Shown here: in pieces, positions 5,904-54,973 of the stretch
Position numbering within the stretch: position 1 is the first letter of the stretch
How the letters are laid out: the number at the start of each line of letters is the position of its first letter
Made by a program: the position numbers and the translations under genes
Assembly (NCBI GenBank): GCA_001600695.1
Contig: BCKQ01000002.1
Location: 1,902,258 to 1,966,257, forward strand
Direction of reading: 5' to 3'
DNA length: 64,000 nucleotides
From: Ascoidea asiatica JCM 7603
Taxonomy: Eukaryota; Fungi; Ascomycota
Notes under the pieces: generated by a model
Told to the model about the DNA's origin: nothing
The model's database searches: none
The model's input: the letters and a program-made list of their open reading frames with translations, nothing else

Positions 5904-5954
5904 ATGGAGATTGATTTTAGAACAGTGAGTGTATTTGAATACGAATATTAATAT

Positions 5955-5985
<31 letters not shown>

Positions 5986-6453
5986 TAAATAATGAGATTG
6001 AAAAGTTATTAATTATACTAACTGTATGATTATTATTATTATAATTATTATTATGTCAAGTCCGTTTATGGAGAAAGTAGAGGTGGACATCATTATTGTA
6101 TTGAATTTAAAAGAAATCCAATAAGAATAGTTGCATATTATTCACAATTTTTAAATGGACTTGAATTTCATTTTAGAGATTTTGCAAAACAAGAATTTGG
6201 TAATTTAACTGGTAAAACTTCAATATTTAATTTACAAGAAGATGAATTAATAACTTCAGTAAATTTAAATTTTGGTTTATTCATAGATTCAATTCAATTT
6301 TTTACAAATAAAAAAAGATGTTCAAAAAGATTTGGTGGTACTGGTGGTGGTAATACAACTGTTGAATTTAATGGTAAATTAGTTAAACTTTTTGGTAAAT
6401 GTGGTGGTTTAGTTGATTGTATGTGTTTTGGAACTATTGATGAAAAATTGTGA
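5904..6453 (+). CDS. Stand-alone jacalin-like (beta-prism I) lectin, 137 aa, two exons (5904-5924, 6061-6453)
   Basis: Exon 1 MEIDFRT; intron 5925-6060 with GTGAGT donor, TACTAAC branch at 6016-6022 and AAG acceptor; exon 2 open in phase 0: SVYGESRGG...FNLQEDELITSVNLNFGLFIDSIQFFTNKKRCSKRFGGTGGG...NGKLVKLFGKCGGLVDCMCFG. Not in the ORF track. Confidence 0.85.
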
Positions 6454-6559
6454 CCATAATAACAATAACTTGTTAATGAGAATTAACTATCAAGTAACTG
6501 TTAACCAAATAGAAATAGAAATAGAAATAGAAACAAAAATAATAATAATAATAATAATA

Positions 6560-6970
6560 ATAAATGTGACTTACGGGGTATCACACGGGGTATTTTTTAT
6601 AATTCATTCCGAGTTTCGACCTACTAGACATCATAATGCGGCAAACACCGCTAACGCACAGATACTTTTATTACCACTTTTGCGGTACTGCGTTTGCTTA
6701 GCCACATTGAACTATTTTTTATTATCACCATCCTCGTCAGTGGCTTTTAGCCCCGATGTCTTTTGACAGTGTGGCGCGCCCTGGTCCACTGACGTCAAGA
6801 ACGCGAGTGACGTAAAGCGGTACAGGATCCACTGCGAGTCTCAGTCCCAGTCCCAGCTATTTCTGCTTCTTCTGCTTCCTCTGCTTCCTCTGCTCTTGTT
6901 CTTCGTTTCAGTCCACCAACCACCGCATTTCTACCGCATTTCTACCGCATATCTACCGCATATCCACTGC
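6560..6970 (+). promoter_or_regulatory. GC-rich promoter island of the RCK kinase gene with ATF/CREB (Sko1/Atf1-type) sites
   Basis: TGACGTCA at 6790-6797 and TGACGTAA at 6808-6815, inside a GC-rich block about 0.7-1 kb upstream of ATG 7635. Confidence 0.55.
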
Positions 6971-7634
6971 TTCACTACTTCACTACTTCACTTATCAACA
7001 GTTCTTAGATTTCAATCTCATTTCAATCTCATTTCATAAAACATTATTTATTCAAATTTCAATTCAACTCATTTCAATTCATTTCAATTAATCTTTAAAT
7101 TATTAAAAGGTTTAAATACAAAACTTCTTCTCAAATTATTCATAAAATAAAGAAACTAGCATTTATTCATTTATTCATTTATTCATTAGATTTTATTACT
7201 AAAAAAGTATAGAAAGATACAAATATTTGTACCTTTTTCCTCAAATACTCATCTTATCAATAATATTTTCTCAATTTTATTTATTATATAATTTTTTTTT
7301 CTTAAATTCATCATAAAACATTCATTAAAACATATTAATCTGAAATTTTTATTTATTTATTATTTTAAAAATATTTAAATTTTTAAACATTTAAAAGTAT
7401 TTACTTTCAAACATCTAAATACAAAATACATCTCATTCTTAATAATCTATTAATAATACAATAATAATATAATCATTTATTTCATTTCATTTACTCTCTT
7501 TATATTTATAATCATATATAGACTTAAATTTATTTATTTATCTATTTAGTCATTTCCTCTTCTTTTTTTTTGTAAATCTTTTTTTATAACATATTACATT
7601 CATATATATTAATTTAATTTAATTTAATTTAAAA

Positions 7635-9701
7635 ATGATTCAAGGATTTAAAAAATTATTTCATAATAAAGATAATAAAGAAAACAAGGATGATAAACAT
7701 ATTAAAGATAATAAACTCAATAGAGATAATAAAGAAAATAAAGATATAATTATAAATTCTGAAAAGGAAAATATAATAAATAGTAACTCAAATAATAATT
7801 CAAATGATACTTTAAATAATACTTCAATGGAAAATCAAATTCCAATCAAAAAATCAAAAAGTTTAAGATTTAAAAATAAAATTAAAAGAGATAAAACTAT
7901 TAAAAAATCAACTACTAATAATTCAAATTCTAATAACAATAATAATAACAATAATAACAATAATAATAAAATACCTAATAATAATTCAAATAACAATTCA
8001 AATAACAATTCAAATAAAATTCCTATAAGGAAAAATCCATATGATATATTAACTCAAAATGGTTATAGAATAATTTCTCAATTAGGTGAAGGTGCTTTCT
8101 CAAAAGTTTATAAAGGTGTTTTAATAAATAAAAATAATAATAATAATGAAGAATTTGTTGCAATAAAAATTATTGAAAAAAGTAATTTAGATTCAAATCA
8201 AAATTCTTCAATTTTAAAAGAAGTTTCAATTTTATCAAAATTAAATCATAAAAATATTGTAAAATTTAAAAAATTTTTTTCAAATAAATATTTTTATTTT
8301 ATTATACAAGAATTATGTAATGGTGGTGAAATTTTTAATCAAATTATTAATTATACTTATCTTAGTGAAAATTTATCAAGACATATAATTATTCAAATTG
8401 CAGAAAGTTTAAAATATTTACATAATGAAATTGGTATTGTTCATAGAGATTTAAAACCAGAAAATTTATTATTTAATAAAATTCCATTTAATTTTCATGA
8501 AAATTTTAATGATAAATTTTTTAAAAAAAAAATTTTAAGAAAAAGTGATGATCCTGAAAATAAAAAATATGAAGGTAAATTTATTTATGGTTATGGTGGT
8601 GGTACAATTGGTATTGTAAAATTAGCAGATTTTGGTTTAAGTAAACAAATTTGGGAATTAAAAACAAAAACTCCATGTGGTACAGTTGGTTATGTTGCTC
8701 CAGAAATTGTTAAAGATGAAAATTATAGTAAAAAAGTTGATTTATGGGGTTTAGGTTGTGTATTATATACATTATTATGTGGATTTCCACCATTTTATGA
8801 TGATAAAATTGATCAATTAACAATAAAAATTTCAAAAGGTCAATTTGAATTTTTATCACCATGGTGGGATGAAATTTCAATTGGTGCAAAAAATTGTATA
8901 AAAAATTTATTATGTGTTAATCCAAAATTTAGATATGATATTAATGAATTTTTTGAAGATGAATGGATTAAAGAATTTTTAAATAAATTACCAAAAGATT
9001 CAAATAATAATTATATTTATGCAATTGATAATGATGGTGATTTATCAAGTAGTTCATTAAATTATGAAATTGAAAAATCTAAATTTTTACATGATAAACA
9101 TATAAGAGATCATAAATTAAATAATAAAAATGAAATTAAAGATAAAGATTTAACAAAAGAAACTATATTATATGCACCTAAAATACCAAGAGATTCATGT
9201 TATACTCCACCTTCAGCATATTCACCTTCAGCTATGATGTTAAGAGATGCATTTGATATATCATCAGCAGTTCATAGAATGAATGAAGAAAAAATATTTA
9301 GTAAAAAACAAGGAAATAATGAGATTATCGAAGAACAAGATGAAGAAGAAGAAGAAGAAGAAGATTATGATGAAAATAAGAATAAGAATAAAAATAAAAA
9401 TAGGAATAGAAGTAGAAGTAGGAGTAAGAGTGAAAGTAAAAGTAAGAGTAGAAATAAAGGAAATAGAAATGGAAATATATTAAATAATGTAATAATTGAG
9501 AACTCTATTGATGGATCATCAGGTACATTTGATTTAAAAATTGAATCATCAAGTATATTTGAAAGAAGAAGACAAAAAAGAGATAAAATTGAAAAAGAAA
9601 ATAGTAATACTAATAGTAATAGTAAAAGTAATAATAAAGGTAATAATGTCAATGTTAATGTTAAATCTAAATTATCTTTAAAACCAATTACTGCAATTTA
9701 A
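7635..9701 (+). CDS. RCK2: Rck1/Rck2 (Srk1)-type MAPK-activated CaMK-like protein kinase
   Basis: LGEGAFSKV, VAIKII, HRDLKPENLLF, the family-specific insert LRKSDDP...EGKF..G.GGG.IG.VKLADFGLSKQIW, KTPCGTVGY and EFLSPWWDEIS. Confidence 0.9.
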   Translation: MIQGFKKLFHNKDNKENKDDKHIKDNKLNRDNKENKDIIINSEKENIINSNSNNNSNDTLNNTSMENQIPIKKSKSLRFKNKIKRDKTIKKSTTNNSNSNNNNNNNNNNNNKIPNNNSNNNSNNNSNKIPIRKNPYDILTQNGYRIISQLGEGAFSKVYKGVLINKNNNNNEEFVAIKIIEKSNLDSNQNSSILKEVSILSKLNHKNIVKFKKFFSNKYFYFIIQELCNGGEIFNQIINYTYLSENLSRHIIIQIAESLKYLHNEIGIVHRDLKPENLLFNKIPFNFHENFNDKFFKKKILRKSDDPENKKYEGKFIYGYGGGTIGIVKLADFGLSKQIWELKTKTPCGTVGYVAPEIVKDENYSKKVDLWGLGCVLYTLLCGFPPFYDDKIDQLTIKISKGQFEFLSPWWDEISIGAKNCIKNLLCVNPKFRYDINEFFEDEWIKEFLNKLPKDSNNNYIYAIDNDGDLSSSSLNYEIEKSKFLHDKHIRDHKLNNKNEIKDKDLTKETILYAPKIPRDSCYTPPSAYSPSAMMLRDAFDISSAVHRMNEEKIFSKKQGNNEIIEEQDEEEEEEEDYDENKNKNKNKNRNRSRSRSKSESKSKSRNKGNRNGNILNNVIIENSIDGSSGTFDLKIESSSIFERRRQKRDKIEKENSNTNSNSKSNNKGNNVNVNVKSKLSLKPITAI

Positions 9702-10009
9702 ATCAAACTATACAGTATAATCAAAGTTATGATTTTATTGGTTTCTTTTCTAAACTTCAATTCGGTATTTTATATTTCATTCTTCTTTTCTTTTTTTTTA
9801 TCTAATTAGTTATTTATGTTTCTCATTTAATGATTATTATTTATTCAGTCTTTTTACATATCAATTCATGATATATTTCAATTTGCAATAGCATAGTTAA
9901 GATAAAAGCATAAAAAAAGAATTTATTGTATATATGTGGATCCACACATTGCATGCAATACACTGTCTTCCAGTGTCCCCTTGCATTGAAACACAGTAAA
10001 ATACAGAAA

Positions 10010-10325
10010 TCATTCACGTGACATTTTTTTTTCTAAATTTTCAAGCCAGCGCCAAGTTCATGGTAATTCTCGCCTTGTTGAGTTTAGAAGTGGTGGCGGT
10101 GGTGGCGGGTGTGTCCCGACATGCAGCCTGCCCGGCCCACGTTGGCGTGCGCACGGAGCTCACGCGTTGCCCGTTGTCTCTGGCGCTGTTCTCGTGTCCC
10201 GGCGCTGTGCCCATGTGCGAGCCCAACTCAGCAATTCCTCTGCCAGCAATTCTGCTCGCAGCTTCCTCGACCCCAGCGATAAAAGAAGAAATCAAACTCG
10301 TTGCTCGCTTCTGCCTTTATCAGAT
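10010..10325 (+). promoter_or_regulatory. GC-rich promoter island upstream of KCS1 with E-boxes
   Basis: TCACGTGAC at 10014-10022 (Cbf1/Tye7-type) and CACGTT at 10138-10143 (Pho4-type); GC-rich block followed by an AT-rich leader of about 850 nt. Confidence 0.45.
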
Positions 10326-11165
10326 CTTAGATTTTTTATTGTTATCACCAATCCATTAGTAATTCTTATTCTATTTCTATTTATCTTTCTATCTTTCTAT
10401 CTTTATCTTTATCTTTATATTCCATATTCTAATTCATATTCTTATTCATATACTTATTGAAATTGAGGTTTGAATTGAATTTGAGATTATATTCAATCAG
10501 ATCATACCAAAAACTACTTTCATATTCTTATTTTTATATTCTTATTTCAATTTCATAAATTTATCAGTATTTGAGAAATCAAAGCAAAAAAAAAACGAAA
10601 GAAAACGAAAAGAAGCACATAATTTCAACTAAAATTTTTTTTTTTTTTTTTTGAAAAACGGTTTAAATTTAAGAAAAACCTTTTCGAATTCAAGAAAATT
10701 TATACAACTTTATTTATTTATTTTTATTCGATAAAGAATTTAATAAAGAGACTATTTAATAATCATTTGATATTAATATATTTTAATAAATATTCAAAGT
10801 TTTCAAATATTTATTATTATTGTAACGTTTTTTACTTTATTTATTTATTTCAAATGATTTATAAAAAAATTATATAAATAATAATCAAAATCATAATAAT
10901 ATTAAAAATAATATCTAAAAAAAAGTTAAAGAATATTCCATTTTCAAAAAATTATATATTTTCAATAAATTTATCAAATTTTATCAACTTTTTTCAAATA
11001 AATATTCCTTAATATTCATCAATATTCATTCATTTATTCATTCATTAATTTATATAAAATATATATAAAATATATATAAACTATATATATATATATTATC
11101 TTTCTTTTCTTGTATTATATCTAATCCATAAATATAAAATCATTTCAAAAAATTATAATCTAATA

Positions 11166-14100
11166 ATGTCAGTACGAAGAAATAATTCAATAAATGATAA
11201 TCATAACAATAATATCAATAAGGATTCAAATACTTCAATAAAATCTTCTAATTTAAAAGGTAGAAAAGCTGCTTTATCTTTCAAATTATTCAATGATAAT
11301 GATCAACAATTAATTAAGTCAAATGATTCAAATATCATTAATACTATCAATAATAATAATAATAATAATAATAACAAGGATACTATCACAACTGATAATA
11401 AATCTATCAAACAAGATAACTTTGATGATAATAATAATACCAATAATGATTCTAAAAAAGATAATCTATTAAAAAAAGACCTTATTCAAAATAAAATTAT
11501 TAATAATTTAAAAGATGATTTAAAAAAACATTATTATATAGTTAGACGCTCTTCAACTTCTATTTCAGCATCTGATTTATCTTCTTCACCTTCTTCTTCA
11601 TCATCATCTTATTCATCAAATACATCTTCATCTGCTTCAGATACTTCATCTATTTCATCACATTCTTCATGCATAAACTCTAATAAAATATTATCAAGAT
11701 CAAAATCTTTATCAAAAGCTTCAACTTTACCTTCAAATTTATATAATAATACACTAATATCAAAAAATAATTTTCTTAATAATCCCCTAAATAACAATAA
11801 TGCTCATCATATTCATAATCATAATCATTTGCATAATCATAATCATAATCATAATCATAATCATAATCATAATCATAATCATAATCGTAATCATTTTGAG
11901 AATTTATCAATAGATCCAAATATAAAGAATTTTGAAAATAAGAAAAATAATATTCACAATAATTCAAATAATAATAACAAGGATAAAAATGAAAATGATA
12001 AAAAAAAATTAATAAAAATTAAAAATCCTTTAACTTTACAACCTTTATCTTCAGCAACTTATATTCCACATACTCCAATTAATTCAAATTTTCAATTAAA
12101 GAAAAAAAAATTATCCGCTGATACAAAGAATAATGATATAAATGATATTAATGATAATAATAATGATAATACTCTTATAGCGCTTACTGATAATGAAAAA
12201 ATCAATAATAATAAAAATATTGATATTCAAAGTAATAAAATTGATGTTAATATACTGAGTGATAAATTCATTCGTCGAATTCATAAACATGCTATTGATG
12301 ATAGCATTGATGAGAGTATTGATGAAAGCATTAGTGAAAGTATTGATGATGATGAACCTGAACTTATAGAAGAAGATTTAGGTGATATTAATACTTTAGA
12401 AATTGTTGAAACTTTAGGTACTGATGATATTCAAAATGATGTCAATAATAATGATAATAATATAAATATTAATAAATTAGATAAAATCAATAATATTTTA
12501 GATAATAATAATGAATTTGATAATATTAATATCAATAAAACAAATATTTCAAAAAATTTTAATAATTTAAATACAGTAGAAAAAAATGAAATTATTAAAA
12601 AAAAAAATAGTCTTACTTTATCAACTTTATCTTTATCTACTGATCCATTAATTCTCAATAGAAATAATAATATTAATAATATAACTAATATCAATACATT
12701 AAAACAAAATCAATCAAAAAATATTATCCAAAATAATGATAACTATAATAATAATAATAATAATAATAAAAATATTATCAATAAATCAAAATCAAGTGAT
12801 TTAAATAATCAAATTGATTTCAGTGATCATGATTCAAATGAAAATTATCCATTGGCGGTTGAATTACAACCTTTTAAAAATAAAGTTGGTGGTCATACTG
12901 CAATTTTTAAATTTTCAAAAAGAGCAATTTGTAAAGCTTTAGTTAATAGAGAAAATAAATGGTATGAATCAATTGAAAGTTCTCATCCAGAATTATTAAA
13001 TTATATGCCAAAATATATTGGTGTATTAAATGTTAGATATAAATATTTAGAAACTATAGATTTTGATTCTCCATTAAATTCAAATCAAAATTCTTTTTTA
13101 AATTCTCAAACTTTAGATAATTCAAAAGTAAATAATAATAATTCTTTTCTAGAAATTGGTAATGATAACAATGATAATAATGTAAATGGTTATAATATTA
13201 AGGATCAACATAATAATAATTTTATCTATAGTAATAATAATAGTAATAATGGAACTGAAAATTTAAACAACAAAAAAGAAAGTTCAAATTCAATGGATAA
13301 TACTAATAATAATAATGACGAAATTTATAAAATTATAAATCAAAATGAATTAAATAATATTGCTCCGAATTTTAAAATTAATGGAAAAAATGATAATTAT
13401 GAATTACCCCCAGAAGTTGTATTAGATGATAATAAACATATTATCCCAGAGTCATTTTGGAATAATTATTCTTTAATAAATAGTACGGATAATAGTAAAA
13501 ATAATAGTCAACTGTTTAATTTTAATAATCAAAAAGTTAAAAATATAAATAATGCAACTTGTATAAATACTAAATTACAAGAATTAGTAATTCAAGAAGT
13601 TTTTGCACCAATAAAAATACATGCAGAAAATGCAAGAAGAAGATTAAAAAATAAAAGAAAATTAAAAAAACAAGATCATTTAAAATCAATTTTAGATGAT
13701 TCTATTATAGACAATAAATCAAAATTATTAATTGGAAATTCTTCAGAACCATCATCAACAACAACTTCAAAATATATAATAGATAAAGAAAAAAAAATTG
13801 GAAATGAGTTAAATAAAGTCAATCCTAATGAAGTAAGTAATAATCGGCAAAAGCAAGATAAAATCAATAAATCTTTCCTTGAAGTGAATATAAATACTCT
13901 ACCATTAAATGAGAATCAATTTGATATTAATAGTCAAAAGAATAACTTAAGTTTAATCAAAAGTAGAGATAAAAATAATACAACTTTGGATTTCACAGAA
14001 ACTGAGAGAAAACATCGTCATAACCGTCATAATAGCTCTAATAATAGTAGTAATAGTGACAAGAATAATAGATCGGATGAAAGTTTAAATATTTTCTCTT

Positions 14101-16509: not shown

Positions 16510-17699
16510 TTTTAAGTTCATATATGTAAATATATAAATATATAAATATAATTGATTTGATTTGATTTGATTAAGATGATGATAATAAAAGGTTATTGTG
16601 GTTTGAAGATATGATTTAATAAGTTATTATTATTAAAATTTAAAATATTATTTATATTTAAATTTATTAATAAATTTATTAATAAATTTATTATTATAAT
16701 ATTGAATAAAGTATTGAATATGATATTGAAAGAGAAATTAAAGATGAATTTGAGAATTGTAATTAAATTTGAATTTAAAGATAATATTGAAAATAACATT
16801 AAATTCTTTTTTAGATTAAAGAAAATAAGATATTAATAAGTATATATTATAATAATAATAATAATAATAATACTATAATATTATAATATTATAATATTAA
16901 TATGAGTTAGATTTTTATATTGAAGTAATTTAGTAAGTGATTAAGTTATTAAGTAAGTAGTATTATATTATATTATATGATATTATTCGATAATACAATA
17001 ATACAAAGTATGTAAAAAATATATAAATAAATATAAATTTATATAATAAGTAAAAATAAAAGTAAAAGTAAAAGTAAAAGTAAAATGAAATAATGAAAAA
17101 ATTAAAAGGAAATAAAGAGAATTTATATCAAAAAAAACATATTATGATATAATTTAAAATAATATAAAAGTAATAGGTAAAGTATTGTAAATATTTATTG
17201 ATAATAAAGATAATTATGGTAATAAAGATTATTTGAATAGATTAAAATGAGATAGAGAGAGAGAGTTAAAAAGTAAGAAATCAATAAATAAATAATGTAA
17301 TGTAATGAATGAATGAATGAATGAATGAATGAATGAATGAATGAATGAATGAAATAAAATAAAATAAATTATCACTAGGTAAATTGGTATACTTTTAAGG
17401 AATATTTATTCATAGTAAATTCAAAATAAAATTTGCGTATTGAAAGTTTTAAAAGTATTGAAAATATTAAAAGTTTTGAAGCTTTGTAAAGCTTAACTTA
17501 CTTTTGGATACAGTTGCTGTAGAATTACAGTAATTAATTATTGATTGATTCAAATATTATTCAAATATTATTCAAATATTATTTGATGATTATTTGATAA
17601 ATAATAAAAGCTTTAATAAAATCTAAAAGTTTTAATTTTTTTCATAGTTTTAAAAGTATTGAAAGTTGAGATTTTTTAAGACAGAATGAAAAAATAAAA

Positions 17700-18870
17700 G
17701 AAAGAAAGAGGTGTGAACTCTTAGCGCGGGTTGTACCCTGGGCTGTGCGGGTCTCAATGGCCTACCAAAAATAGTTTCGGGGTGGCCAGGGCTCTCTAAA
17801 ACAGGGCTCTGGAGGTCATGAGCGAGCCCACTCGAGTTGCCAACGACGTAATCAGCGAGCTCTCGGGGAGATTGCAGCATCGGGGCGCTGGAGCGCGTCG
17901 GAGAACGCAGTCGCAGCGCTCGACGGTCTGACTGGCAGCAGGAGAGTTCATTGTCGGCTGTTGCTGAGAATCGAATCAGAACTGATCCGCCTTCAAAAAG
18001 GCGAAAGGAGAGCACTCTGGGCTTTATTTACTACCCAACTTCAGACTTTCTCAGACTTTCTCAGACTCTTGTGAAATAAATGCTCAAGTTTAAACTGAGC
18101 AGTTCCACTGGTGTATTCGGGTGTCTTTCTCTAGTACAATAGTGTATTTTCTGTTTCTCCCCCTGGGTTTATTCTGGTAAAGAGTGGATGGTGAGAATAT
18201 TTGCTTTGCGTTTGTGTGTGAAAGTGTTGTGATTCATGGGAGTTGAAACCGTTTTGGTTTTGGGTTTGCTGTTTATTCTACCGCTTGAACTTTTATATTA
18301 TTATGGGATATTATTATTACTATTGGAGAGGAGAAGAGAATTCAATTTCCGTTTTACAGAGTGACAGTGGTTACTGAAAGAACAAAGTGCAAAGTGCAAA
18401 CTGGTGGCGGCTGGAGCAGTGGCGGCCGATAGCGCACTGTGCGTGGCGCTGCACTTTCGACCATGGGAAGAACACCAAAAGGAAGCGTTACGTAATGATG
18501 CACAAATAAGACCGGGTAGCCTGCACTGGAATATTGTTTTGATGGGCGGACGAGAGTCTGGAACCCACCGGACCCCACTGGCAATAGCTGGTGCTAGCTG
18601 GCACCAGCTGGTTTTTTGCAGAATTCCCAAGTAGCAGTTCCACATTTCTGGTTTCACGCCCGAATTTCTGCTTGCCGCGTGGTGAGCACTGGTAAATTTG
18701 TTACATTTTTATTGAATTTGTTAATTTTGTTCCTGAGTCCGGTTGTGAGCCGATTGTGAGCCGGTTGTGAGCCGGTTGCGAGCTCTTCGCAGTTCTCAGA
18801 AAAAATTCCTGATTGCGGCAGTCGAATGAGAAAATGCCAGCACCAGTCACGTGCTCCAGGGCGAATAATA
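17700..18870. promoter_or_regulatory. Large GC-rich regulatory island
   Basis: Abrupt GC rise; TTACGTAA near 18488, CAGCTG pair near 18600, 11-bp GAGCCGGTTGT repeats at about 18735-18780, GTCACGTG near 18846. Its ORFs have no recognisable protein character. Confidence 0.5.
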
Positions 18871-19735
18871 TCTCAATCTTCACAACACACAACTTTTGAG
18901 ACAATTTTATTAGCTTTTGTTATTTTGTGTTATTCTCCTTGTTTTCTTTGTTCTCTTTGATTTTACTTTTATTTTTGTTCAATTTTAGTCAATTAAATTC
19001 ACTTTAAGTCAATTCAATTCATTTTTAGTCAATTTTAGTTAATTTTAGTCAATTTTAGTCAATTTTAATCACTTTCAGTCAATTTTAACCAAAATTTGTC
19101 AAAGATAATCAAAAATTGTTAATATTTATCAATATTTGTTAAAAAAATTCGTTAAAAATTGTCGAAAAATTCAATAATGATCTCTTTTTATTATTATTTT
19201 TATTATTATTCATATTTATTTAAAGTCATAGACATTTGTTAAACTATTGGTATCACTTACCGATAATACTAATACTATAAAGTTATTTTATTTAGTCTTT
19301 AATCTTTAAGTTAATCATTAATCACTTTAAGGGCATTAAATCCAGAGTAATGATTTTAAATATATTGATCTTATTATAAATTTTTTTTTCGTAAATTTTT
19401 AAATTTATCATAATTTGTCTAAAACTACAAAAAGTAAAAGTAATCAGAAAAAAAAACTTGAAAACGTTTAAAATGTAAATGATTTAACAATACAATATAA
19501 ATATATATTTCATAAAGTTTATATATAAATATGAGAGAGTCTATCATTAAATTACATCATTATAAATATAGTCTATCATTTATAATTACCGCTAATAGAG
19601 ATATTACATATTAGAAATTGAAATTTAGAAATTAAATATTAGATATTAAATTTTAAAGATTAAAGATTAAAGATTAGATATATGAACAAGGATAATTAAT
19701 GAAAATAATAAAAAAGAATAAATATGATTAAACCA

Positions 19736-44632: not shown

Positions 44633-44933
44633 CACCAGTGTTTGCGATGAAAATATGAACGGACAAATGCCTGCATTACAGGGATATTTTTATAGATATA
44701 AATTAATTTACGCTATTTTGTTTATCTAATTACCCGCTAGTTTTGAAATACATCGAAGTTTTGATTCTTGTTTGATCTAGAATATTCGCACGGTTTTCCG
44801 CTGTCTGTAAAAAGCTTTTTGTTTGTTTTTAAGCAGATTGAATTTTTATGTTCTAAATTAGCAAATATTTACAATCTTTATTCGAAAAGAAAACAATTGG
44901 TTTGCTTTTATTAATAGCTATTAAATAAATGAA

Positions 44934-45951: not shown

Positions 45952-46071
45952 TCATTCATTTTCTCTCCCACATCCTTCACATAATGGAATATTTAATCCA
46001 TTGATTTTACCACAATAACAGGTCCAGAAATTATCTTTAGGTCTAGGAACGCTAGCATGACGATAACCCAT
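45952..46071 (-). CDS. 39-aa micro-protein (or truncated paralog) consisting of one RanBP2-like zinc finger
   Basis: MGYRHASVPRPKDNFWTCYCGKINGLNIPLCEGCGRENE*; same W-x-C-x-C-G-x-I-N-x6-C-E-x-C pattern as 29583-29879. Below the ORF-track length cutoff. Confidence 0.55.
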   Translation of the reverse strand: MGYRHASVPRPKDNFWTCYCGKINGLNIPLCEGCGRENE

Positions 46072-47452: not shown

Positions 47453-48760
47453 TCAGTAAGGAGCATAATTGAATCCTAACTCATCAATTTCATCTCCATC
47501 TTGACCATAGAATCCAACAATTTGAAATCCTGATGGTGCTGTAAATGTGGTACAAGTACCGGATGTCTTACCTGCTGAGACAGTGTTGCCATCTGAAGTG
47601 GTTAATTTCAAATAGAATACTCTGGTGTGACTACTATATGTATCAACACAAGCATAAGCTCCAGTTAAATATTCACCATCTGTTAATGTTAAAGAATATG
47701 CATCACCTCCAGTACCACCATGAGAAAATACAGTTCCATCTTCAAGAGTAAGAGATACAGCATCTAATCTATTGGCTCCTCTTAAGGTTACAGACGAAGT
47801 CATAGAACCTTCAGCAATATCATCAAGATCATTGAACCAGGTACCATGGAATCCACCAACAATATCACTTTGTTTGAAGGTAGAGGATAAGGTATAGGTG
47901 AAATTGACTAGAACTGGGTTATGATCAGATAAAGTACTACCTTCATATTCAAACAAAGTACTTTCATAATTGAAAGCATTGGCAGTAAGAGTGATGGCCT
48001 TACTACCTCTGTAAAGGACTTTGTCAACGGTTTCACAGGTATTGTTGGCAGCAGGATTGTCACATACCAAAGCATCTGCTCCTTGGGCTGGAGCTGAACC
48101 ATCTCTGATCAATTCAACCCATGCATCAGTCATATCATTTTGGGTGCCGAATAAACGAATAACATCAGCAGTTCTGGTGTAACGAGAATTGGTGTCACCG
48201 AACACAATAACAGCATCTCCATCGGCATTTGCATCAATCCAATCAGCAACTTGTTCAATGTTATCTGCTCTGGCCTCGTTGTCGCCATCCTCACTTCCTG
48301 CATCCGTATGGAGATTGATGAAATCAATATAAACTCCATCTTCTAATCTGACCTTCATATATGTGAACCCCTTTGGAGTCAAACAATCATTTTCAGAAGC
48401 ATCAGAACAGTCATCCCATTTGGTTCTACCGAAATTGATCCAAGGATAATTGGATAATGAATTCAACCCAGAACCAATAGCTGCACCTCCAGAAGTAGCG
48501 GTTCTGTATGTATGGTCATCATATTCATATAAAGTTGAATGGTAGTTGAAATCCTCTTGAACATGAATAACATCTAATTGATCCTTATATGTTGAAAATA
48601 AGGATCCGATTTGGGTGGTGGCAGTAGTTTTATCTAAACTTTCATCATTACTTTGAAGAACTTCAGGTAACCCAGCTACATTGAATGAAAGAACATTGAA
48701 AGCACCATCAGCAGCAATTAAACCTGCGGAATAAAATGCGTATAAAATTGAAGTAAGCAT
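47453..48760 (-). CDS. Secreted endonuclease/exonuclease/phosphatase (EEP) domain + C-terminal jacalin domain protein
   Basis: Signal peptide; EEP motifs LSFNVAGLP, VIHVQEDF, NLHTDAG, FGDTNSRY, VDKVLYRG, LSDHNPV; jacalin motifs GGFHG..FND, LRGANRLDAV, HGGTGG, LTDGEYL, IVGFYG.DGDEIDELG. Confidence 0.88.
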   Translation of the reverse strand: MLTSILYAFYSAGLIAADGAFNVLSFNVAGLPEVLQSNDESLDKTTATTQIGSLFSTYKDQLDVIHVQEDFNYHSTLYEYDDHTYRTATSGGAAIGSGLNSLSNYPWINFGRTKWDDCSDASENDCLTPKGFTYMKVRLEDGVYIDFINLHTDAGSEDGDNEARADNIEQVADWIDANADGDAVIVFGDTNSRYTRTADVIRLFGTQNDMTDAWVELIRDGSAPAQGADALVCDNPAANNTCETVDKVLYRGSKAITLTANAFNYESTLFEYEGSTLSDHNPVLVNFTYTLSSTFKQSDIVGGFHGTWFNDLDDIAEGSMTSSVTLRGANRLDAVSLTLEDGTVFSHGGTGGDAYSLTLTDGEYLTGAYACVDTYSSHTRVFYLKLTTSDGNTVSAGKTSGTCTTFTAPSGFQIVGFYGQDGDEIDELGFNYAPY

Positions 48761-50389
48761 TGTATAAAAGGCTACTCTTTTTTTTGAGCTAAAGAAAAAA
48801 TTTCAAAATATTTGTTAATTCAATTATTTGAGATATTTATTTGTGGAGTTGATTGTTTTAGATATTTTAGTTGGCTCAAATCTTTGGAAAAGTCTAGTCT
48901 TTTTTATACCATTTTTTTGATTTATTGAATTTCATTCAATTTTGGTATTTATACAATACTTTCAGCAAAATTTATTCTGACCTAGGAACATTCTGCCAAT
49001 CAAAAATAATAGATTTCAATAAGTGAATTTTAGGTGGTTTAGACTATTCAATAAAAGTAATTCAACAATATTTTGTGTAGGTACATTATACAAGAGTATG
49101 CATTAAATTTTTCCTAAAAAGATGATAATCTTCTTATTCGTCACTTTTCACTGTTACTTGAATTTTTTTTCTGGATTTATAGTTAAAATTAGTCTCGAAG
49201 TTTCACAACGATATGCTTCTCTGTTTTCTTCAAAATAAATAAAGGATTTTTAATTTCTAGTAACATATACTGTATTTCGTAGTAATTTTATAAGTAACAT
49301 TTTTATTATTTACCACTATAGCAAAATCCTTATATGAAAAGTGTTTTGTAATTTGAGAGTCATATTCTTTTATAAAAAAAAAAAGATTTATTTTTATTTA
49401 TAGGAATCCATTTCCGAGAGTAGTTTCTTTTATACAGGGTTGAATACCGAAATATCCACATGAAACCAATGGATAAATGATATTTTCAAAAGCCATCTCT
49501 TTTAAACAAGGTATTGCTTGAATATATAATTAATTTAGTTCTAACCAAAAGAAAAATAGTATTAGAGCATCTTTTCTCACCTATTACTGGTTGGTTATTA
49601 GAGCTGTATTGATACTGTACTATTTGAATTCCCATGCTGAGTTATGTATTATTGCATATCACTCAAACCCTTTTTTGTTCAAAGAAAAAATGCTTTAAGC
49701 TTTTAGGTAAGAAAAACGTTTTTACTAAAAAAATTTGGCTGTCAATTTGACAATAATCTGGATAATCAAATTGGCAACGTGGGTGTTTATTTGGATTTTG
49801 CTGCTCACTATTAGTACATATTTATTTCCAAAAGGGGATTAACTTAAAATCAGTATTACATTTGAACGTCAATCCAAATGAATTCGAGACAAGAGTAAAA
49901 TGATTCAATCAATTAACATTGGCAGGTTAGCTGAATTTGCTCGGCCTAGAAAAATCTCGTTAGGATTAAAAGAGAAAGGAAATTTTTCATAGCTGAATTA
50001 AAGACAATTTGATGAATTCACATTCAATTTATTGTGATTGTTTTTACAAAATTCAATGTTCGGAAAGCCTCTTATTTTGGAGTAGTTTGTGAGATGTATA
50101 CCAAGTGATTTCAGTCAACAATGAAATCTCATGTTTATTGAGTAAACTCAATTAATAATGAAATTTTCAATTGCTGCAGAACATCATGATAATTTCAGAT
50201 ATAAATATTATCCAATTTATCTCCTTGAAAATATAATTTGAAAGAAAACAGATATTCCAATTTAATAACTTCTTGGATTTATTCTTAATCAAATATTTAT
50301 CTCACATTCGTTTATTTTCTTTATATAATCTCTTCAATTTTTTTATAAAAAAAAAGATTTTTAAATAACATACTAATATATTATTAAGA

Positions 50390-51778
50390 ATGTTTTTTTC
50401 AAGTTCTGTTTTACAAATTTTAGTATTGGCTTTAGGTGTTTCAGCCTTCCCTTCATTCAATTACAAACCATACCCTCAAGACTCAGATGAACAGTACAAT
50501 AAATTAAGATATTTAGGTACAACTGGTCCATACATTTCAAATCGTGGATATGGAATTTCACCAGAGGTTCCACCACAATGTACAGTCACGCAAGCTCATT
50601 CATTTATGAGACATGGTGAAAGATTTCCAACTACCGGTACTGCAAAGTCACAATCAGCTTTAATCAAAAGAATGCAAAACTCAAATGTTACCAATTTTAA
50701 AGGCCCATTAGCATTTATTGAAGATTATGAGTTCTATGTTAAAGATAATAATGATTTGGAAACCGAATCCACCAGTGGATTTTATGCAGGTTTGAAAGAT
50801 GCTTATGATTTAGGTGTTACTTTACGAGAAAGATATAGTGATTTATGGGATGGAGAAACCCTTATGCCAGTTTTCACTAGTGGTCAAGCTAGAGTTGTAA
50901 ATACAGCTAGATATTTTGCTAAAGGTTTTTTCCAAGATAGTTATTCTAATTTATCATCAATTCAAGTTATTCCTGAAAAAGAAACCCAAGGTGCAAATAC
51001 TTTAACAAGTCACGATGCTTGTGCCAATTATAATTCCTCTTTTAATGACGCAATTACTAATTCATTTTCTTCTGATTACCTTGATGTAGCAGCTGATAGA
51101 TTAAATGAATTAAGTCCAGGATTTGATTTAGATGGTGATGATGTTTATGTATTAATGGGACATTGTGGTTTTGAATTGAATGTTGTTGGAAACTCTCCAT
51201 TTTGTGAAATTTTCACTCAAGAAGAATTGATTAATTTTGCATACTCCAAGGATTTAGGTTTCTATTATGAAAATGGAGCTGGTTATAATTTATCTGTTCC
51301 ATTGGGATCCGTATATGCCAATAATACTTATACCTTATTAAGTGATGATTCTTTAAATCTTACTTTTTCATTTTCTCATGATACAGATATTGTAACATTT
51401 GTAACTGCTTTAGGATTATTTAAACCTGAGAAAGATTTAAGTGCAGATAAAATTGATTTTGGATCAGTCTTTAGAAGTTCAGAAATTGCTCCAATGGGTG
51501 CTAGAATTATTCATGAACGTTTAGAATGTAATGAAAGTTATAATGAAACTGAATCGACAATTGAAACTTATGTAAGAGTTATTGTCAATGATGCAGTTAT
51601 TCCAATTCCAGATTGTCAAGATGGACCTGGTTTTTCATGTTCATTAGAGGGTTACAAAGAAAATTTTGAAGATTTATTAAATGGTTCTAATTATCTAGAT
51701 GCATGTGGAGTTAATTCAACATATCCTCAATATTCTAAATTTTATTGGGATTGGACACCTACTTTTGAAAATAATTAA
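50390..51778 (+). CDS. Secreted histidine acid phosphatase / phytase (Pho5/Pho3-like)
   Basis: Signal peptide, RHGERFP catalytic motif, FSHDTD, PMGAR..ERL.C, YVRVIVNDAVIPIPDC.DGPGFSC; many NxS/T sites. Confidence 0.93.
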   Translation: MFFSSSVLQILVLALGVSAFPSFNYKPYPQDSDEQYNKLRYLGTTGPYISNRGYGISPEVPPQCTVTQAHSFMRHGERFPTTGTAKSQSALIKRMQNSNVTNFKGPLAFIEDYEFYVKDNNDLETESTSGFYAGLKDAYDLGVTLRERYSDLWDGETLMPVFTSGQARVVNTARYFAKGFFQDSYSNLSSIQVIPEKETQGANTLTSHDACANYNSSFNDAITNSFSSDYLDVAADRLNELSPGFDLDGDDVYVLMGHCGFELNVVGNSPFCEIFTQEELINFAYSKDLGFYYENGAGYNLSVPLGSVYANNTYTLLSDDSLNLTFSFSHDTDIVTFVTALGLFKPEKDLSADKIDFGSVFRSSEIAPMGARIIHERLECNESYNETESTIETYVRVIVNDAVIPIPDCQDGPGFSCSLEGYKENFEDLLNGSNYLDACGVNSTYPQYSKFYWDWTPTFENN

Positions 51779-52279
51779 TTTTTTCTAAATATCATATATT
51801 TACTCTTTTTACTTTATTATTTCTTATATTTTCTAGTGTTAATTTTATAATTTAATTTCCTTTTTTTTTAAACATTTTGTTTGATTATCTATACTTTTAT
51901 AAAAATACCAATTGTTTCAATATATGAAATGAAATCAGTTTACAATTAATACTAACTATGAAAGTTGTTGAGAGGTTATCTAAAAGCTCTTATAAAGTCC
52001 ATATATTCTCAATGATAATTGAGTATTACGAGTTTAGTAATAGGAACCTTTAAATTTAAAAGAATTAGCTTTATAAATAGTCAAATTTTGTTTTTAATGA
52101 GAGATACTTAATTTTTCTAAATTTTATTGACTTTTGTAAAAATAAACTGCATATAAATTTTGAAACAAGCTCCTAAAATAGTTTTTTTATTACAGCTTAA
52201 ATGATACTTGAAAGATATATTTTTTTCAAAAAAACTTAAGTGATTGAAATAATAATAAAATAATTTTCAATAGATTTCA

Positions 52280-53755
52280 TTATACAAAAGCTAATCTTTT
52301 AATAATCATATGTAAACATTTTGCAACAAAAATAAAATAAATAATTAAAATTAAAATAAAAGCAGAAGTAAAAAGAAAATTATATTTTGGATTAATTTTT
52401 TGTTTAAGTATATCAGAAATACCAATAATTAAAACAAAAATAAATTCATAAATTAAGAAAAAAAAAGTAATTAATAAAGCATCTTTTGTTGAAGATCTTA
52501 ATTGAAAATTTTTAAATTTTAACTTATTTGTAAAACCTCTATGAATTGGAATTTTATTATAAGATAAATTAACAATTTTTAAATTTTTTAAATTTTTTAT
52601 ATTTTTAATTTTTTTAATTGAATTATTATTTAAATTTAATTTTTTTAAATTTATTAAAAAACTTAATTCTATTGACATTAAATTAATTGAATTAAAACTT
52701 AAATCTAAGAAAATTAAATTTTTTAAAAATTTTAAATTTTTAATTTCTTTAATAAAATTATATGATAAATTTAATTTTTTTAAATTAATTAAATTATTTA
52801 AATTTTCTATAATTAATAATTGATTTTTAGATAAATCTAAAAAAATTAAATTTTTTAAAAATTTTAAATTTTCAATTTTTTTTATAAGATTATTTGATAA
52901 TTTTAAAAATTTTAAATTATTAAAAAGATTAAAATTTAATGGAATTTTAATTAAATTACATGAATTTAAATTTAAATATTTTAAATTTAATAAATAATTA
53001 AAATTATTAAAATTTTTAAAATTATAAATTAAATCAATTGAAGATTGATTATTATTATTATTATTATTATCATTTGAAGGAGGAGGTAATAAATTATTTT
53101 TATATAAATTTAAATAATTTAAATTTATACAAAATTTTAAAAATTTTAAATCTTGATAATTAAAATTATTTTTTGATAAATTTAAAAATTTTAAATTATA
53201 CCAAAATTTTAAATTAAAATTTATTATTGAATTTAAATTTAAATTTGAAATATTATAAGAACATGAATTTAAATTTAAAAATTTTAAATTTTTTTTTGAA
53301 TTTAAATATAATAATAAAATTAAATTTGGAGATAATTTTAATGGAAAATATGAAAAATTATTAAAAAATTGAATTGAGATTAAATTTAAACAAAATGGAG
53401 TTGAAATATTATCAATTATTGATAATATATTATTATTTATAATATTATTATTAAATGGAATTATAAATAAGAATTTAGTATAAATTTTAAAAAAATGAAT
53501 AAATTTTTTAATTTTAAAAAATTGAATTAATTTTTGATTTAATTTTATATAATTTTTAAATTTTTTTTTATTTAATTCATTAATAATTAAAATACTTTTA
53601 AAATTTGTTGATAATATAATTTTTTTAAATAATTTTTTATATGATTTTTTAATAATTATTAAATTATTTGATAAAGTTAATAACCAAACTTTATCAAATG
53701 GTAAATAATTTATAATTTTTTCAATAATTTGAGGTGATAAATGATTATTTAACAT
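52280..53755 (-). CDS. F-box-like N-terminus + about 10 SDS22-type leucine-rich repeats + two C-terminal TM helices
   Basis: N-terminal LSPQIIEKIINYLP; repeats such as LKFLKLSNNLIKKIENL, LIFLDLSKNQLLIIENL and LKKLNLSYNFIKEIKNL; hydrophobic ALLITFFFLIYEFIFVLIIGI and FLFTSAFILILIIYFIFVA. Confidence 0.75.
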   Translation of the reverse strand: MLNNHLSPQIIEKIINYLPFDKVWLLTLSNNLIIIKKSYKKLFKKIILSTNFKSILIINELNKKKFKNYIKLNQKLIQFFKIKKFIHFFKIYTKFLFIIPFNNNIINNNILSIIDNISTPFCLNLISIQFFNNFSYFPLKLSPNLILLLYLNSKKNLKFLNLNSCSYNISNLNLNSIINFNLKFWYNLKFLNLSKNNFNYQDLKFLKFCINLNYLNLYKNNLLPPPSNDNNNNNNNQSSIDLIYNFKNFNNFNYLLNLKYLNLNSCNLIKIPLNFNLFNNLKFLKLSNNLIKKIENLKFLKNLIFLDLSKNQLLIIENLNNLINLKKLNLSYNFIKEIKNLKFLKNLIFLDLSFNSINLMSIELSFLINLKKLNLNNNSIKKIKNIKNLKNLKIVNLSYNKIPIHRGFTNKLKFKNFQLRSSTKDALLITFFFLIYEFIFVLIIGISDILKQKINPKYNFLFTSAFILILIIYFIFVAKCLHMIIKRLAFV

Positions 53756-54461
53756 TATGTATAATGAATATTTTTTTTTTTAAAATTAGAATTTAAAAAT
53801 ATCTTTTATTTTTAACAATTTTTTAATTGAATTCTTTAAATGATCAATTGATATATTGTTTTACTGTTTGATTCAAGACTTCATCTTTTAAGAATAAGTG
53901 AATGAATGAATCAATGAATGAATGAAGTGTTGTTTGTTGTTTTTGTGTTGGATAAATTGAGGTTCTTTTGAAGACTGAGAGAAGAGTTCAGTTCTTGAGA
54001 TGAATAAGATCATTGTGCATAGATAAAGAGTGTTTTGTTCTTGATTTCTTCTTGATTTCTTCTTCATTTCTTCTTGATTTCTTCTTTTGTGATTGATGTG
54101 TGTGAGTGAAGATTGTTTCCATTGTGGTGTTTGAATGTGTATTTATTAAACATTGAACCATTCAATTTATTGTCCATTGTTTATATCTTCTTTCTTTGTT
54201 TATTTCTTTGTTTATATCTTTGTTTATATCTTTGTTTATATCTTCTTTTTTTGTTCTTTGTTCTTTGAATGCGGTAATTGAACATCCGTTGTCAGGAAGT
54301 TGATCGGGAGAACTAATCCGCCCACGTGAATATTTAAACTTAAAGACCAATTATACGGTACTTCTTATTTCATTTCAATTATTATATTAATATATTATTA
54401 TAATATATTATTATAAAGTATATAAAGTAATATTATAGTAATATTATAGTAATATTATAAA

Positions 54462-54973
54462 TTAATCTTCATTTGAACCAAAACTGATAGCATCAATGAA
54501 ACCACCTTTTCTAGCAGTGATTTGAACTAATTTACCATTTAAATCAATTTCATGTTCAATACCACCATTATCATTACCAAAATAAATTGATTCATTATTT
54601 TTATTTGTAAAAAATTTAATTGCATCAACATAATCACCAGATCTTAAAATAATTTTATTAATATATTCATTATCATCAAGATCTAATTCAAATTCACCTT
54701 TTTCACCATTATTATTACCAATTAATTGATTATGATCATCATCTTCATAAATTAATTCAATTCCATTAATAAATTCTTCATAATAAACATTAATTTGTTT
54801 TAAATCATCATTAATTTCAATAGATTGTTCATCTCCACCTTCTCCACCATATTCAATCTAACATATAAAAAAAAAAAGAATGTTAATATAAATTAAGTTA
54901 TATTACTAAAGATAACTTTAATAACTTATATATATAACTTATATATATAACTTACTGTTTGTAAATCAACCAT
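54462..54973 (-). CDS. Stand-alone jacalin/griffithsin-like lectin, 137 aa, two exons (54973-54956, 54857-54462)
   Basis: Exon 1 MVDLQT; intron 54955-54858 (GTAAGT...TATTAAC...TAG); exon 2 IEYGGEGGDEQSIE...LDLDDNEYINKIILRSGDYVDAIKFFTNK...FGNDNGG...NGKLVQITARKGGFIDAISFGSNED*. Not in the ORF track. Confidence 0.88.

What the first reader, a model, noticed from the sequence alone, without database searches (positions are those of the whole stretch)
5904..54973. Candidate jacalin-lectin defence/recognition system in a budding yeast: two hidden paralogous lectins plus an EEP-jacalin
Seen: two genes about 48 kb apart (5904-6453 + and 54462-54973 -) each splice to exactly 137 aa. Both have a phase-0 intron after a 6-7-codon first exon (MEIDFRT | MVDLQT). 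They align colinearly (YYSQFLNGLE/YYEEFINGIE, GLFIDSIQFFTNK/GDYVDAIKFFTNK, NGKLVKL..KCGGLVD..FG/NGKLVQI..RKGGFID..FG) and lack signal peptides. A third jacalin domain is on the secreted EEP protein at 47453-48760. The two lectins differ strongly in charge (about 15 acidic/17 basic residues and 5 Cys versus about 32 acidic/9 basic). Established: beta-prism-I jacalins bind mannose/galactose glycans, and leaderless cytoplasmic lectins are anti-nematode/anti-insect effectors in mushrooms. I know of no stand-alone jacalin in model budding yeasts. Inference: a lineage-specific, diversifying cytoplasmic lectin family acting against grazers, competitors or viruses, missed by ORF callers because of the micro-exon.
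Basis: partly seen in the sequence, partly recalled or inferred. Interest (0 to 1): 0.82.

Follow-up and report, generated by a model that had tools for sequence, protein, structure and literature searches.

The report
Small leaderless jacalin lectins in yeast
A very AT-rich budding yeast, very probably Ascoidea asiatica, carries three small sugar-binding (jacalin-type) proteins whose genes are hidden behind a tiny first exon; the genes look real, but nothing ties them to the nearby enzyme-lectin gene as a defence system.

Summary
Genes at 5904-6453 (+) and 54462-54973 (-) each have a 7- or 6-codon first exon, a phase-0 intron and a second exon. Each second exon is a complete Jacalin domain (Pfam E 4.8e-12 and 1e-16) and has no usable start codon. 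Each gene encodes 137 aa. The charge and Cys counts are as stated.

A third paralog with the same micro-exon lies on another contig, and the genome has exactly three. The model of B is a confident beta-prism I (pLDDT 95). Its best structural matches are griffithsin, PPL3, banana lectin and ZG16. Two of the three GxxxD sugar loops are kept in A and B.

The "system" reading fails:
- About 15 unrelated genes lie between A and B.
- The three paralogs share no neighbour families apart from the ubiquitous MFS transporters.
- The EEP-jacalin belongs to a widespread fungal family (2590 homologs, 55-64% identity). Its jacalin domain forms a separate clade.

No orthologs appeared in the protein libraries, but these Met-less exons would escape most gene callers, so the blank is weak evidence. 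No RNA runs exist, so splicing rests on sequence signals, conserved intron position and the same signal style in this genome's actin gene. A defence role is untested.

Other notes of this scan cover the same stretch and the third paralog, all in this genome. Verdict: a new member of a known kind, of modest interest.

The parts
5904..5924 (+). Lectin A, exon 1 (7 codons, MEIDFRT)
   Evidence: The ATG is followed by GTGAGT at 5925. Exon 2 has no usable Met, so this exon is needed for a start.
5925..6060 (+). Lectin A, phase-0 intron (136 nt, 13% GC)
   Evidence: GTGAGT 5' site, TACTAAC 39 nt before the 3' AG, 12 in-frame stops. The actin gene of this genome uses the same signal style.
6061..6453 (+). 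Lectin A, exon 2 (130 codons plus TGA): full Jacalin domain, 5 Cys, near-neutral charge
   Evidence: Pfam PF01419 E 4.8e-12, 46.9 bits against a cut-off of 22. 36% identical to B.
54956..54973 (-). Lectin B, exon 1 (6 codons, MVDLQT)
   Evidence: The ATG at 54973-54971 is followed by GTAAGT at 54955. Exon 2 has no Met at all.
54858..54955 (-). Lectin B, phase-0 intron (98 nt, 12% GC)
   Evidence: GTAAGT, a TATTAAC branch-like site 25 nt before the 3' AG, a T-rich tract, and a TAG at the 3' end that closes the frame.
54462..54857 (-). Lectin B, exon 2 (131 codons plus TAA): full Jacalin domain, very acidic (32 D/E against 9 K/R)
   Evidence: Pfam PF01419 E 1e-16. AlphaFold model pLDDT 95.2. Best Foldseek matches are griffithsin, PPL3, banana lectin and ZG16. 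The motifs containing GDYVD and GGFID align to the griffithsin motifs containing GDYID and GDYLD.
47453..48760 (-). EEP-jacalin gene (435 aa, hydrophobic N-terminus). Listed because the finding includes it; judged not to belong to the small-lectin family or to any system with it.
   Evidence: Exo_endo_phos2 plus Jacalin. 2590 homologs, 55-64% identical across Ascomycota and Basidiomycota. Its jacalin domain forms a separate clade, SH-aLRT 100.

Best explanation
A and B are two of exactly three paralogous genes in this genome. The third is on contig 15. The genome is very probably Ascoidea asiatica. Each gene encodes a leaderless, single-domain beta-prism-I lectin of the mannose-binding jacalin-related type (C carries an extra tail). 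Each has a 5-7-codon first exon ending in [R/Q]-T, a phase-0 intron of about 100-140 nt with GTRAGT and a TACTAAC-like branch site, and a second exon that carries the whole domain.

Shown: the gene structure from sequence, Pfam membership of A, B and C, the fold of B, retention of the GxxxD Asp loops in Greek keys 2 and 3 of A and B, and native AT-rich composition.

Inferred: the proteins stay in the cytosol and bind terminal mannose/glucose-type glycans at two sites per domain, as banana lectin does. Because cytosolic proteins meet few such glycans at home, the likeliest targets are glycans met after cell damage, ingestion or contact with other microbes. That is a storage or defence-type role, which I put at roughly 25-30%. 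An endogenous stress or glycoprotein-handling role is about as likely.

The secreted EEP-jacalin is a separate, widely conserved fungal enzyme-lectin fusion. The three genes in the window are not a functional system.
For: Gene structure:
- Exon and intron coordinates and signals are given.
- Exon 2 of A has no usable Met (its only one is residue 121) and exon 2 of B has none at all.
- The intron sits at the same place in all three paralogs.
- ACT1 of the same genome uses micro-exons with GTACGT/GTAAGT and TACTAAC.

Family and fold:
- Pfam Jacalin is above cut-off for A, B and C.
- The A/B/C profile finds exactly three loci at 199-216 bits; the next hit is the Metallopep-jacalin at 63.9 bits.
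- The model of B has pLDDT 95.2 and pTM 0.88.
- The best Foldseek matches are mannose-type jacalin-related lectins: griffithsin, PPL3, BanLec, ZG16 and artocarpin.
- The GxxxD motifs align to those of griffithsin.

Not a system:
- A, B and C form a clade with SH-aLRT 83; the EEP jacalin domains form a separate clade with support 100.
- GC3 is 2-6% in A, B and C, like the neighbouring genes.
- The EEP-jacalin has 2590 homologs.
- The neighbours of the three paralogs share no gene families other than MFS transporters.

Organism: 71 contigs matches BCKQ01000001-71 in PMC6041473.
Against: - There is no RNA or protein evidence that A or B is expressed or spliced.
- Sugar binding is inferred from motifs only. 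Greek key 1 has lost the Asp (N in A and B, S in C), and C also has N in key 3.
- Only B was folded.
- Three of the six jacalin loci lie within 49 kb, which is unlikely by chance (p about 3.5e-4). Some historical or functional link between A, B and perhaps the EEP gene cannot be fully excluded.
- The tree support for the A+B+C clade is modest.
Confidence: 0.7

Rival explanations
1. One reading: a lineage-specific, diversifying family of cytoplasmic lectins acts as toxins or recognition factors against grazers (nematodes, mites, insect larvae), competitors or viruses. It forms a defence system with the EEP-jacalin.
For: The proteins are leaderless, like the cytoplasmic lectins of mushrooms that act as nematotoxic and entomotoxic defence proteins (PMC8227253; PMC2798750, listed). 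No orthologs were found in the protein libraries. The paralogs differ strongly in charge. Some of the nearer sequence relatives are jacalin-aerolysin fusions, in which the lectin aims a pore-forming module (P0136). Three jacalin loci lie within 49 kb.
Against: Nothing links the genes functionally. About 15 unrelated genes lie between them and no neighbourhood is conserved among the paralogs. The EEP jacalin domain is a distant branch of a pan-fungal family. There are no expression, toxicity or binding data. The lack of orthologs is weak evidence, because Met-less exons escape ORF callers and fungal genomes could not be scanned.
Confidence: 0.15
2. An endogenous role: the small lectins act inside the cell, for example in stress response or in handling mannosylated glycoproteins exposed to the cytosol. 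They may derive from the same fungal jacalin lineage as the C-terminal domain of the conserved Metallopep-jacalin protein.
For: The jacalin domain of the Metallopep protein on contig 5 is the closest in-genome relative. It is 31% identical to B (E 3e-14) and scores 63.9 bits with the A/B/C profile. It falls in the same weakly supported tree neighbourhood. Among the solved relatives matched are a plant 'salt stress-induced protein' and ZG16, a secretory-granule protein. The composition is fully native, so these are old residents.
Against: The tree neighbourhood has only 58-61% support. No functional data exist. An extreme charge difference between paralogs is not expected for a single conserved housekeeping role.
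Confidence: 0.3
3. A and B are decaying or unexpressed gene relics. The apparent micro-exons and introns are chance signals in AT-rich DNA.
For: There is no RNA evidence. GTAAGT-like and TA-rich motifs are common in DNA of about 22% GC. A degraded jacalin fragment does exist elsewhere in the genome (L003).
Against: All three paralogs keep intact 130-231-codon frames with above-threshold Jacalin scores. They have an ATG-led micro-exon with a homologous ending ([R/Q]-T), the same intron phase and position, and branch-site-like motifs 25-39 nt from the 3' AG. The actin gene of this genome is built the same way. The model of B is very confident.
Confidence: 0.05

Closest known systems
Mannose-binding jacalin-related lectins (griffithsin, banana lectin, PPL3 of the pearl oyster, ZG16, artocarpin/Heltuba type)
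   Same: A single beta-prism-I domain of about 120-150 aa. Foldseek TM-scores are 0.72-0.84 with probability 1.00. The profile E-values against griffithsin and banana lectin are 1e-9 to 4e-10. The Gly-rich loops and GxxxD motifs align: in B, the motifs containing GDYVD and GGFID align to the griffithsin motifs containing GDYID and GDYLD.
   Different: Sequence identity is only 20-28%. The first Greek key has lost the Asp (N or S), so at most two sites remain, against three in griffithsin. The host is a budding yeast and the gene carries a micro-exon. B is extremely acidic and A carries 5 Cys. No binding data exist.
Cytoplasmic defence lectins of mushroom-forming fungi (for example CGL2; the jacalin-related lectin of Grifola frondosa is the known fungal jacalin)
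   Same: Small, leaderless fungal lectins. The jacalin class is already recorded in Agaricomycetes (PMC8227253).
   Different: Those proteins have shown toxicity or binding and are abundant in fruiting bodies. Here nothing is known about expression or activity, and the host is an Ascoideales yeast. No sequence relative at ortholog level was found.
Fungal Metallopep (PF12044) plus C-terminal Jacalin proteins (the gene on contig 5 of this genome; 'metallopeptidase' of Pyricularia oryzae; from memory, S. cerevisiae YIL108W has this architecture)
   Same: Closest jacalin domain within the genome (31% identity; 63.9 bits). Same weakly supported tree neighbourhood.
   Different: There the jacalin domain is the tail of a 530-800-aa peptidase-like protein. 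A, B and C are stand-alone, and C has an acidic repeat tail.
Fungal secreted EEP-jacalin family (sources name members 'endonuclease/exonuclease/phosphatase family protein', 'mannose-binding lectin' or 'Rv0888-like')
   Same: The window gene 47453-48760 is a plain member. It has the same two Pfam domains and is 55-64% identical to proteins of Cyberlindnera, Wickerhamomyces, Dipodascopsis, Aspergillus, Penicillium, Rhizoctonia and Trametes.
   Different: It is unrelated to A and B beyond the shared domain type. Its GC (0.39) and GC3 (0.25) are the highest in the window, although the Rad5-like gene has a GC3 of 0.23.

Membership tests
Jacalin-like lectin domain (Pfam PF01419) | Score above the curated gathering cut-off (22 bits) over most of the 136-position profile | tested here: met
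   A exon 2: 46.9 bits, profile positions 10-133. B exon 2: 62 bits, positions 4-134. EEP C-terminus: 71.4 bits. Paralog C: 58.2 bits.
Jacalin-like lectin domain (Pfam PF01419) | Beta-prism I fold (three four-stranded Greek keys) | tested here: met
   The model of B exon 2 has pLDDT 95.2 and is all beta. 134 PDB matches reach E <= 0.001, and the best-ranked ones listed are jacalin-related lectins. A and C were not folded.
Mannose-type jacalin-related lectins | Gly-rich loop plus a GxxxD loop forming the sugar site | tested here: met
   A and B keep G...D in Greek keys 2 and 3 and keep the N-terminal Gly-rich (GG) loop. Key 1 has N instead of D. C keeps only key 2. The check used motif alignment only, not geometry.
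Mannose-type jacalin-related lectins | Measured binding of mannose/glucose-type glycans | not testable with these tools
   Needs recombinant protein and glycan arrays or ITC.
Fungal cytoplasmic defence lectins (functional class) | No signal peptide, so the protein is made in the cytosol | tested here: inconclusive
   The N-termini (MEIDFRT + SVYGESRGG; MVDLQT + IEYGGEGG) are hydrophilic with no hydrophobic core. No predictor was run and there are no localisation data.
Fungal cytoplasmic defence lectins (functional class) | Toxicity to, or binding of, grazer glycans; expression induced or specific to a tissue | not testable with these tools
   No RNA run holds this DNA.
Gene cluster / defence system | Members adjacent, or a neighbourhood conserved among paralogs | tested here: not met
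   A and B are 48 kb apart with about 15 unrelated genes between them (kinase, IPK, MFS, SSF, fumarate reductase, Rad5-like and others). Paralog C sits among a GPCR, an ADH, a SET-domain protein, a GH28 and an MFS.
Gene cluster / defence system | The three jacalin domains share recent common ancestry | tested here: not met
   A and B do share ancestry (E 9e-24; clade with C). The EEP domain does not: best local E 0.007, a separate clade with support 100, and no hit by the A/B/C profile at E <= 0.1.
Fungal EEP-jacalin family | N-terminal Exo_endo_phos2 plus C-terminal Jacalin, about 435-450 aa, high identity to fungal members | tested here: met

The most novel reading that the evidence does not exclude
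The three small lectins are an Ascoideales-restricted family of cytoplasmic effector lectins. They would act against grazers in beetle galleries, or in recognising the mannan of other yeasts (the sister genus Saccharomycopsis preys on yeasts). This would be the first lectin-based defence or predation factor described in budding yeasts.
Probability: 0.15. Interest if true: 0.6.

Novelty: new member of a known kind. Interest (0 to 1): 0.3.

Why it matters
If these genes are expressed, they extend stand-alone jacalin-related lectins to the budding-yeast subphylum. The literature search here found no report of one: only one paper held both 'jacalin' and 'Saccharomycotina', and it was unrelated. 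They also show concretely how a Met-less main exon behind a 5-7-codon micro-exon hides a whole small gene family from ORF-based annotation in an intron-poor yeast. The proteins are small, and B is predicted with high confidence. They resemble griffithsin and banana lectin, so they could interest people who look for new mannose-binding lectins. Biologically this is an ordinary small paralog family with an unknown role, not a new kind of system.

Tried and rejected
1. Word-indexed homolog searches with B exon 2 and with the A/B/C alignment found nothing at E <= 0.001.
2. An exhaustive HMMER search of 1.84 billion representatives gave 1564 jacalin hits but none at ortholog level. Single-domain hits scored 87 bits or less, against 199-216 bits for self. 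Their sources were metagenomes, protists, a few fungi and a bacterium.
3. The ESM Atlas returned only generic jacalin clusters.
4. The RNA evidence search found only DNA runs; DNA contigs cannot show splicing.
5. dN/dS between paralogs was not computed. At 35-44% identity and GC3 of 2-6% the synonymous sites are saturated and constrained by composition.
6. The idea that the small lectins arose from the EEP jacalin domain was rejected.
7. Horizontal transfer of the small lectins was rejected because their composition is native.
8. Literature searches for YIL108W plus jacalin and for jacalin plus sphingomyelinase gave nothing useful.
9. All searches used exon 2 by reference, and residue counts were taken exon by exon and summed.
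10. tBLASTn across other Saccharomycotina was not possible. The genome collections on hand hold bacteria and archaea only.
Full report
**Observation**

The coordinates and the gene models are right.

- Gene A starts at ATG 5904 with seven codons (MEIDFRT). GTGAGT follows, then a TACTAAC box 39 nt before an AG at 6059-6060. A 130-codon frame runs from 6061 to 6450 and ends in TGA.
- Gene B, on the minus strand, starts at 54973 with six codons (MVDLQT). GTAAGT follows, then a TATTAAC box 25 nt before the AG, a T-rich tract, and a 131-codon frame from 54857 to 54465 that ends in TAA.
- Both genes give 137 aa and both introns are phase 0.
- Exon 2 of B has no Met. Exon 2 of A has one only at residue 121. 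Neither domain can therefore be translated without the upstream micro-exon.
- Every search and the fold used exon 2 by reference.

**What the proteins are**

- Both second exons pass the Pfam Jacalin gathering score: A at 46.9 bits (E 4.8e-12) and B at 62 bits (E 1e-16).
- The two exon-2 products are 36% identical (E 9e-24).
- A profile of the family matches solved mannose-type jacalin-related lectins: Parkia lectin, banana lectin, griffithsin, PPL3, ZG16 and Horcolin.
- An AlphaFold model of B exon 2, built on a 17-row alignment, has mean pLDDT 95.2 and pTM 0.88 and is all beta.
- Foldseek against the PDB puts griffithsin, PPL3, banana lectin, ZG16 and artocarpin first, at probability 1.00 and TM 0.72-0.84.
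- In B, the motif containing GDYVD aligns residue for residue with the griffithsin motif containing GDYID, and the motif containing GGFID aligns with the one containing GDYLD.
- From general knowledge of this family, the final Asp of GxxxD and the Gly-rich loops form the sugar site.
- A and B keep G...D in Greek keys 2 and 3. In key 1 the Asp is replaced by Asn. Two sites per domain, as in banana lectin, is therefore the most likely arrangement.
- This is motif-level inference. No binding was or could be measured.

**Family size and intron conservation**

- A Pfam Jacalin scan of the whole 20.3-Mb assembly found six loci: A, B and the EEP-jacalin in the window, plus three elsewhere.
- The first of the three others is a third small lectin on contig 15 (L004).
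- The second is a degraded fragment of the EEP-jacalin C-terminus on contig 10, with two in-frame TAA codons (L003).
- The third is a Metallopep (PF12044) protein with a C-terminal Jacalin on contig 5 (L006).
- The contig-15 gene has the same build: five codons (MDYQT), GTAAGT, TACTAAT, CAG, then a frame starting REYGSGNGG. Its exon 2 has 231 codons, a jacalin domain followed by an acidic repeat tail.
- The three micro-exons end alike ([R/Q]-T) and the introns sit at the homologous position.
- A profile of A, B and C finds exactly those three loci at 199-216 bits. The Metallopep jacalin follows at 63.9 bits, and the EEP jacalin is not found at all at E <= 0.1.
- As a control for splice signals I looked at the actin gene of the same genome. 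It has a 10-nt first exon with GTACGT, a 14-nt second exon with GTAAGT, and two TACTAAC boxes shortly before TAG. Micro-exons and this signal style are therefore normal in this genome.
- No RNA run holds this DNA; only three DNA runs from two studies do. Splicing is therefore inferred, not observed.

**Organism**

- The window has long intron-poor ORFs, an RTA1-family protein and TACTAAC branch sites.
- GC is about 22%.
- The assembly has 71 contigs. This equals the accession range BCKQ01000001-BCKQ01000071 given for Ascoidea asiatica NRRL Y-17576 in PMC6041473.
- Earlier notes of this scan reached the same species from the tRNA-CAG genes. I did not re-test those.
- None of the lectin exons contains a CTG codon, so the ambiguous CUG reading does not affect them.

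**The EEP-jacalin**

- The 435-aa ORF at 47453-48760 (-) has a hydrophobic N-terminus, an Exo_endo_phos2 domain (E 7.5e-22) and a Jacalin domain (E 1.3e-19).
- It has 2590 homologs among the 8000 candidates scored. The best 120 share the same architecture and are 54-64% identical.
- These homologs span budding yeasts (Cyberlindnera fabianii, Wickerhamomyces ciferrii, Dipodascopsis tothii), Aspergillus, Penicillium, Xylariales, Rhizoctonia, Trametes and Mycena.
- It is therefore a plain member of a pan-fungal family. Some sources label members as Rv0888-like. Rv0888 of M. tuberculosis is described as an extracellular nuclease and sphingomyelinase (PMC4733049 and PMC5893642).
- Its jacalin domain barely aligns with B (best local E 0.007).
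- In a tree of 155 jacalin domains, the EEP domains form their own clade with SH-aLRT 100. A, B and C form a separate clade with support 83, in a weakly supported (58-61) neighbourhood with fungal tandem-jacalin proteins and the Metallopep jacalins.

**Is it a system?**

- About 15 unrelated genes lie between A and B. They include a protein kinase, an inositol polyphosphate kinase, MFS and SSF transporters, a flavodoxin-like protein, RTA1, a fumarate reductase with a cytochrome b5 domain, a Rad5-like SNF2/RING protein, a zf-DNL protein, the EEP-jacalin, a histidine acid phosphatase and an LRR protein.
- The third paralog sits among a Git3-type GPCR, an alcohol dehydrogenase, a SET-domain protein, a GH28 polygalacturonase and an MFS transporter.
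- No partner family apart from the ubiquitous MFS transporters recurs next to the paralogs.
- Three of six jacalin loci within 49 kb is unlikely by chance (p about 3.5e-4). Two of the three small lectins within 49 kb has p about 0.014. An unrelated-architecture locus falling between them has p about 0.007.
- The simplest account is an old local duplication for A and B, plus a coincidence or weak regional effect for the EEP gene.
- This residual oddity is recorded. It does not amount to a system.

**Distribution**

- Word-indexed searches found no relative of 72-229 aa.
- The exhaustive profile search of 1.84 billion representatives found many jacalin proteins but none at ortholog level. The best single-domain hits score 87 bits or less.
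- Where a source is known, those hits come from metagenomes and protist transcriptomes. Some fungal multi-domain proteins also appear (Tilletia, Aspergillus aculeatus, Xylaria, Pyricularia, Acaulospora).
- This fits lineage restriction but is weak evidence. Exon 2 of B is bounded by a stop and has no ATG, GTG or TTG start, so ORF callers would miss orthologs too. No fungal genome collection could be scanned at the DNA level.

**Function**

- What can be said with fair confidence: these are leaderless, mannose-type beta-prism-I lectins with two probable sugar sites.
- Their composition is native to the genome (GC3 2-6%).
- They have diverged to 35-44% identity and very different charges.
- The defence reading borrows from mushroom cytoplasmic lectins (PMC8227253). 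It gains a little from the fact that some nearer relatives are jacalin-aerolysin fusions (P0136). Nothing here tests it.
- An endogenous role is about as likely.
These are separate estimates. The role readings sit inside the molecular reading, so the numbers are not meant to add up to one.

**Verdict**

These are new members of a known kind, namely stand-alone jacalin-related lectins, apparently not reported before from budding yeasts. The annotation lesson, whole domains hidden behind micro-exons, is useful. Interest is modest.

Noticed in passing
L004:1373-2181 (G000:C15, about 102347-103155): This is the third small jacalin lectin. It has the same micro-exon (MDYQT) and phase-0 intron, but exon 2 has 231 codons. 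The jacalin domain is followed by a roughly 95-aa, very acidic, Asn/Glu/Tyr-rich tail with an 11-residue-like periodicity. The tail gives a weak, below-cut-off Pfam hit to CTD11 of ABC-3C systems (E 0.0016).
   Followed up: partly
L003:1500-1840 (G000:C10:171384-171704): This is a degraded copy of only the jacalin C-terminus of the EEP-jacalin gene. Its last 52 aa closely match those of the window gene, and it has two in-frame TAA codons. It is a pseudogene fragment.
   Followed up: partly
L006:232-1836 (G000:C5, about 220311-221915): This is a Metallopep (PF12044, E 1.9e-127) protein with an HEIGH motif and a C-terminal Jacalin domain. It is the closest in-genome relative of the small lectins' domain. 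The open frame extends further upstream (690 aa), so the true start may lie before the first ATG listed.
   Followed up: partly
window 17650-18900: This is a GC-rich island (0.43) in a genome of about 22% GC. It has no convincing ORF and no Rfam family at gathering score. It could be an uncatalogued non-coding RNA gene or a foreign or repeat remnant.
   Followed up: no
window 47453-48760: The EEP-jacalin gene has the highest GC (0.39) and GC3 (0.25) of the genes checked in the window. Most neighbours have a GC3 of 0.02-0.16, and only the Rad5-like gene comes close (0.23). Its best hits are spread over Ascomycota and Basidiomycota at a nearly flat 54-64% identity. Horizontal transfer or unusually strong conservation were not resolved.
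   Followed up: partly
window 52280-53755: The LRR-domain ORF next to lectin B has only 9% GC (GC3 2%). That is extreme even for this genome.
   Followed up: no
window 5570-5645: ARAGORN calls a 76-nt tRNA-Ile (AAT) about 260 bp upstream of lectin A. Rfam's tRNA model at gathering score did not list it, although it listed the other two tRNAs of the window.
   Followed up: no
L009:2600-3085 (G000:C1, actin gene): The actin gene of this genome starts with a 10-nt first exon and a 14-nt second exon. Each is followed by an intron with a TACTAAC box close to the 3' TAG. It is a useful reference for splice signals in this genome.
   Followed up: partly
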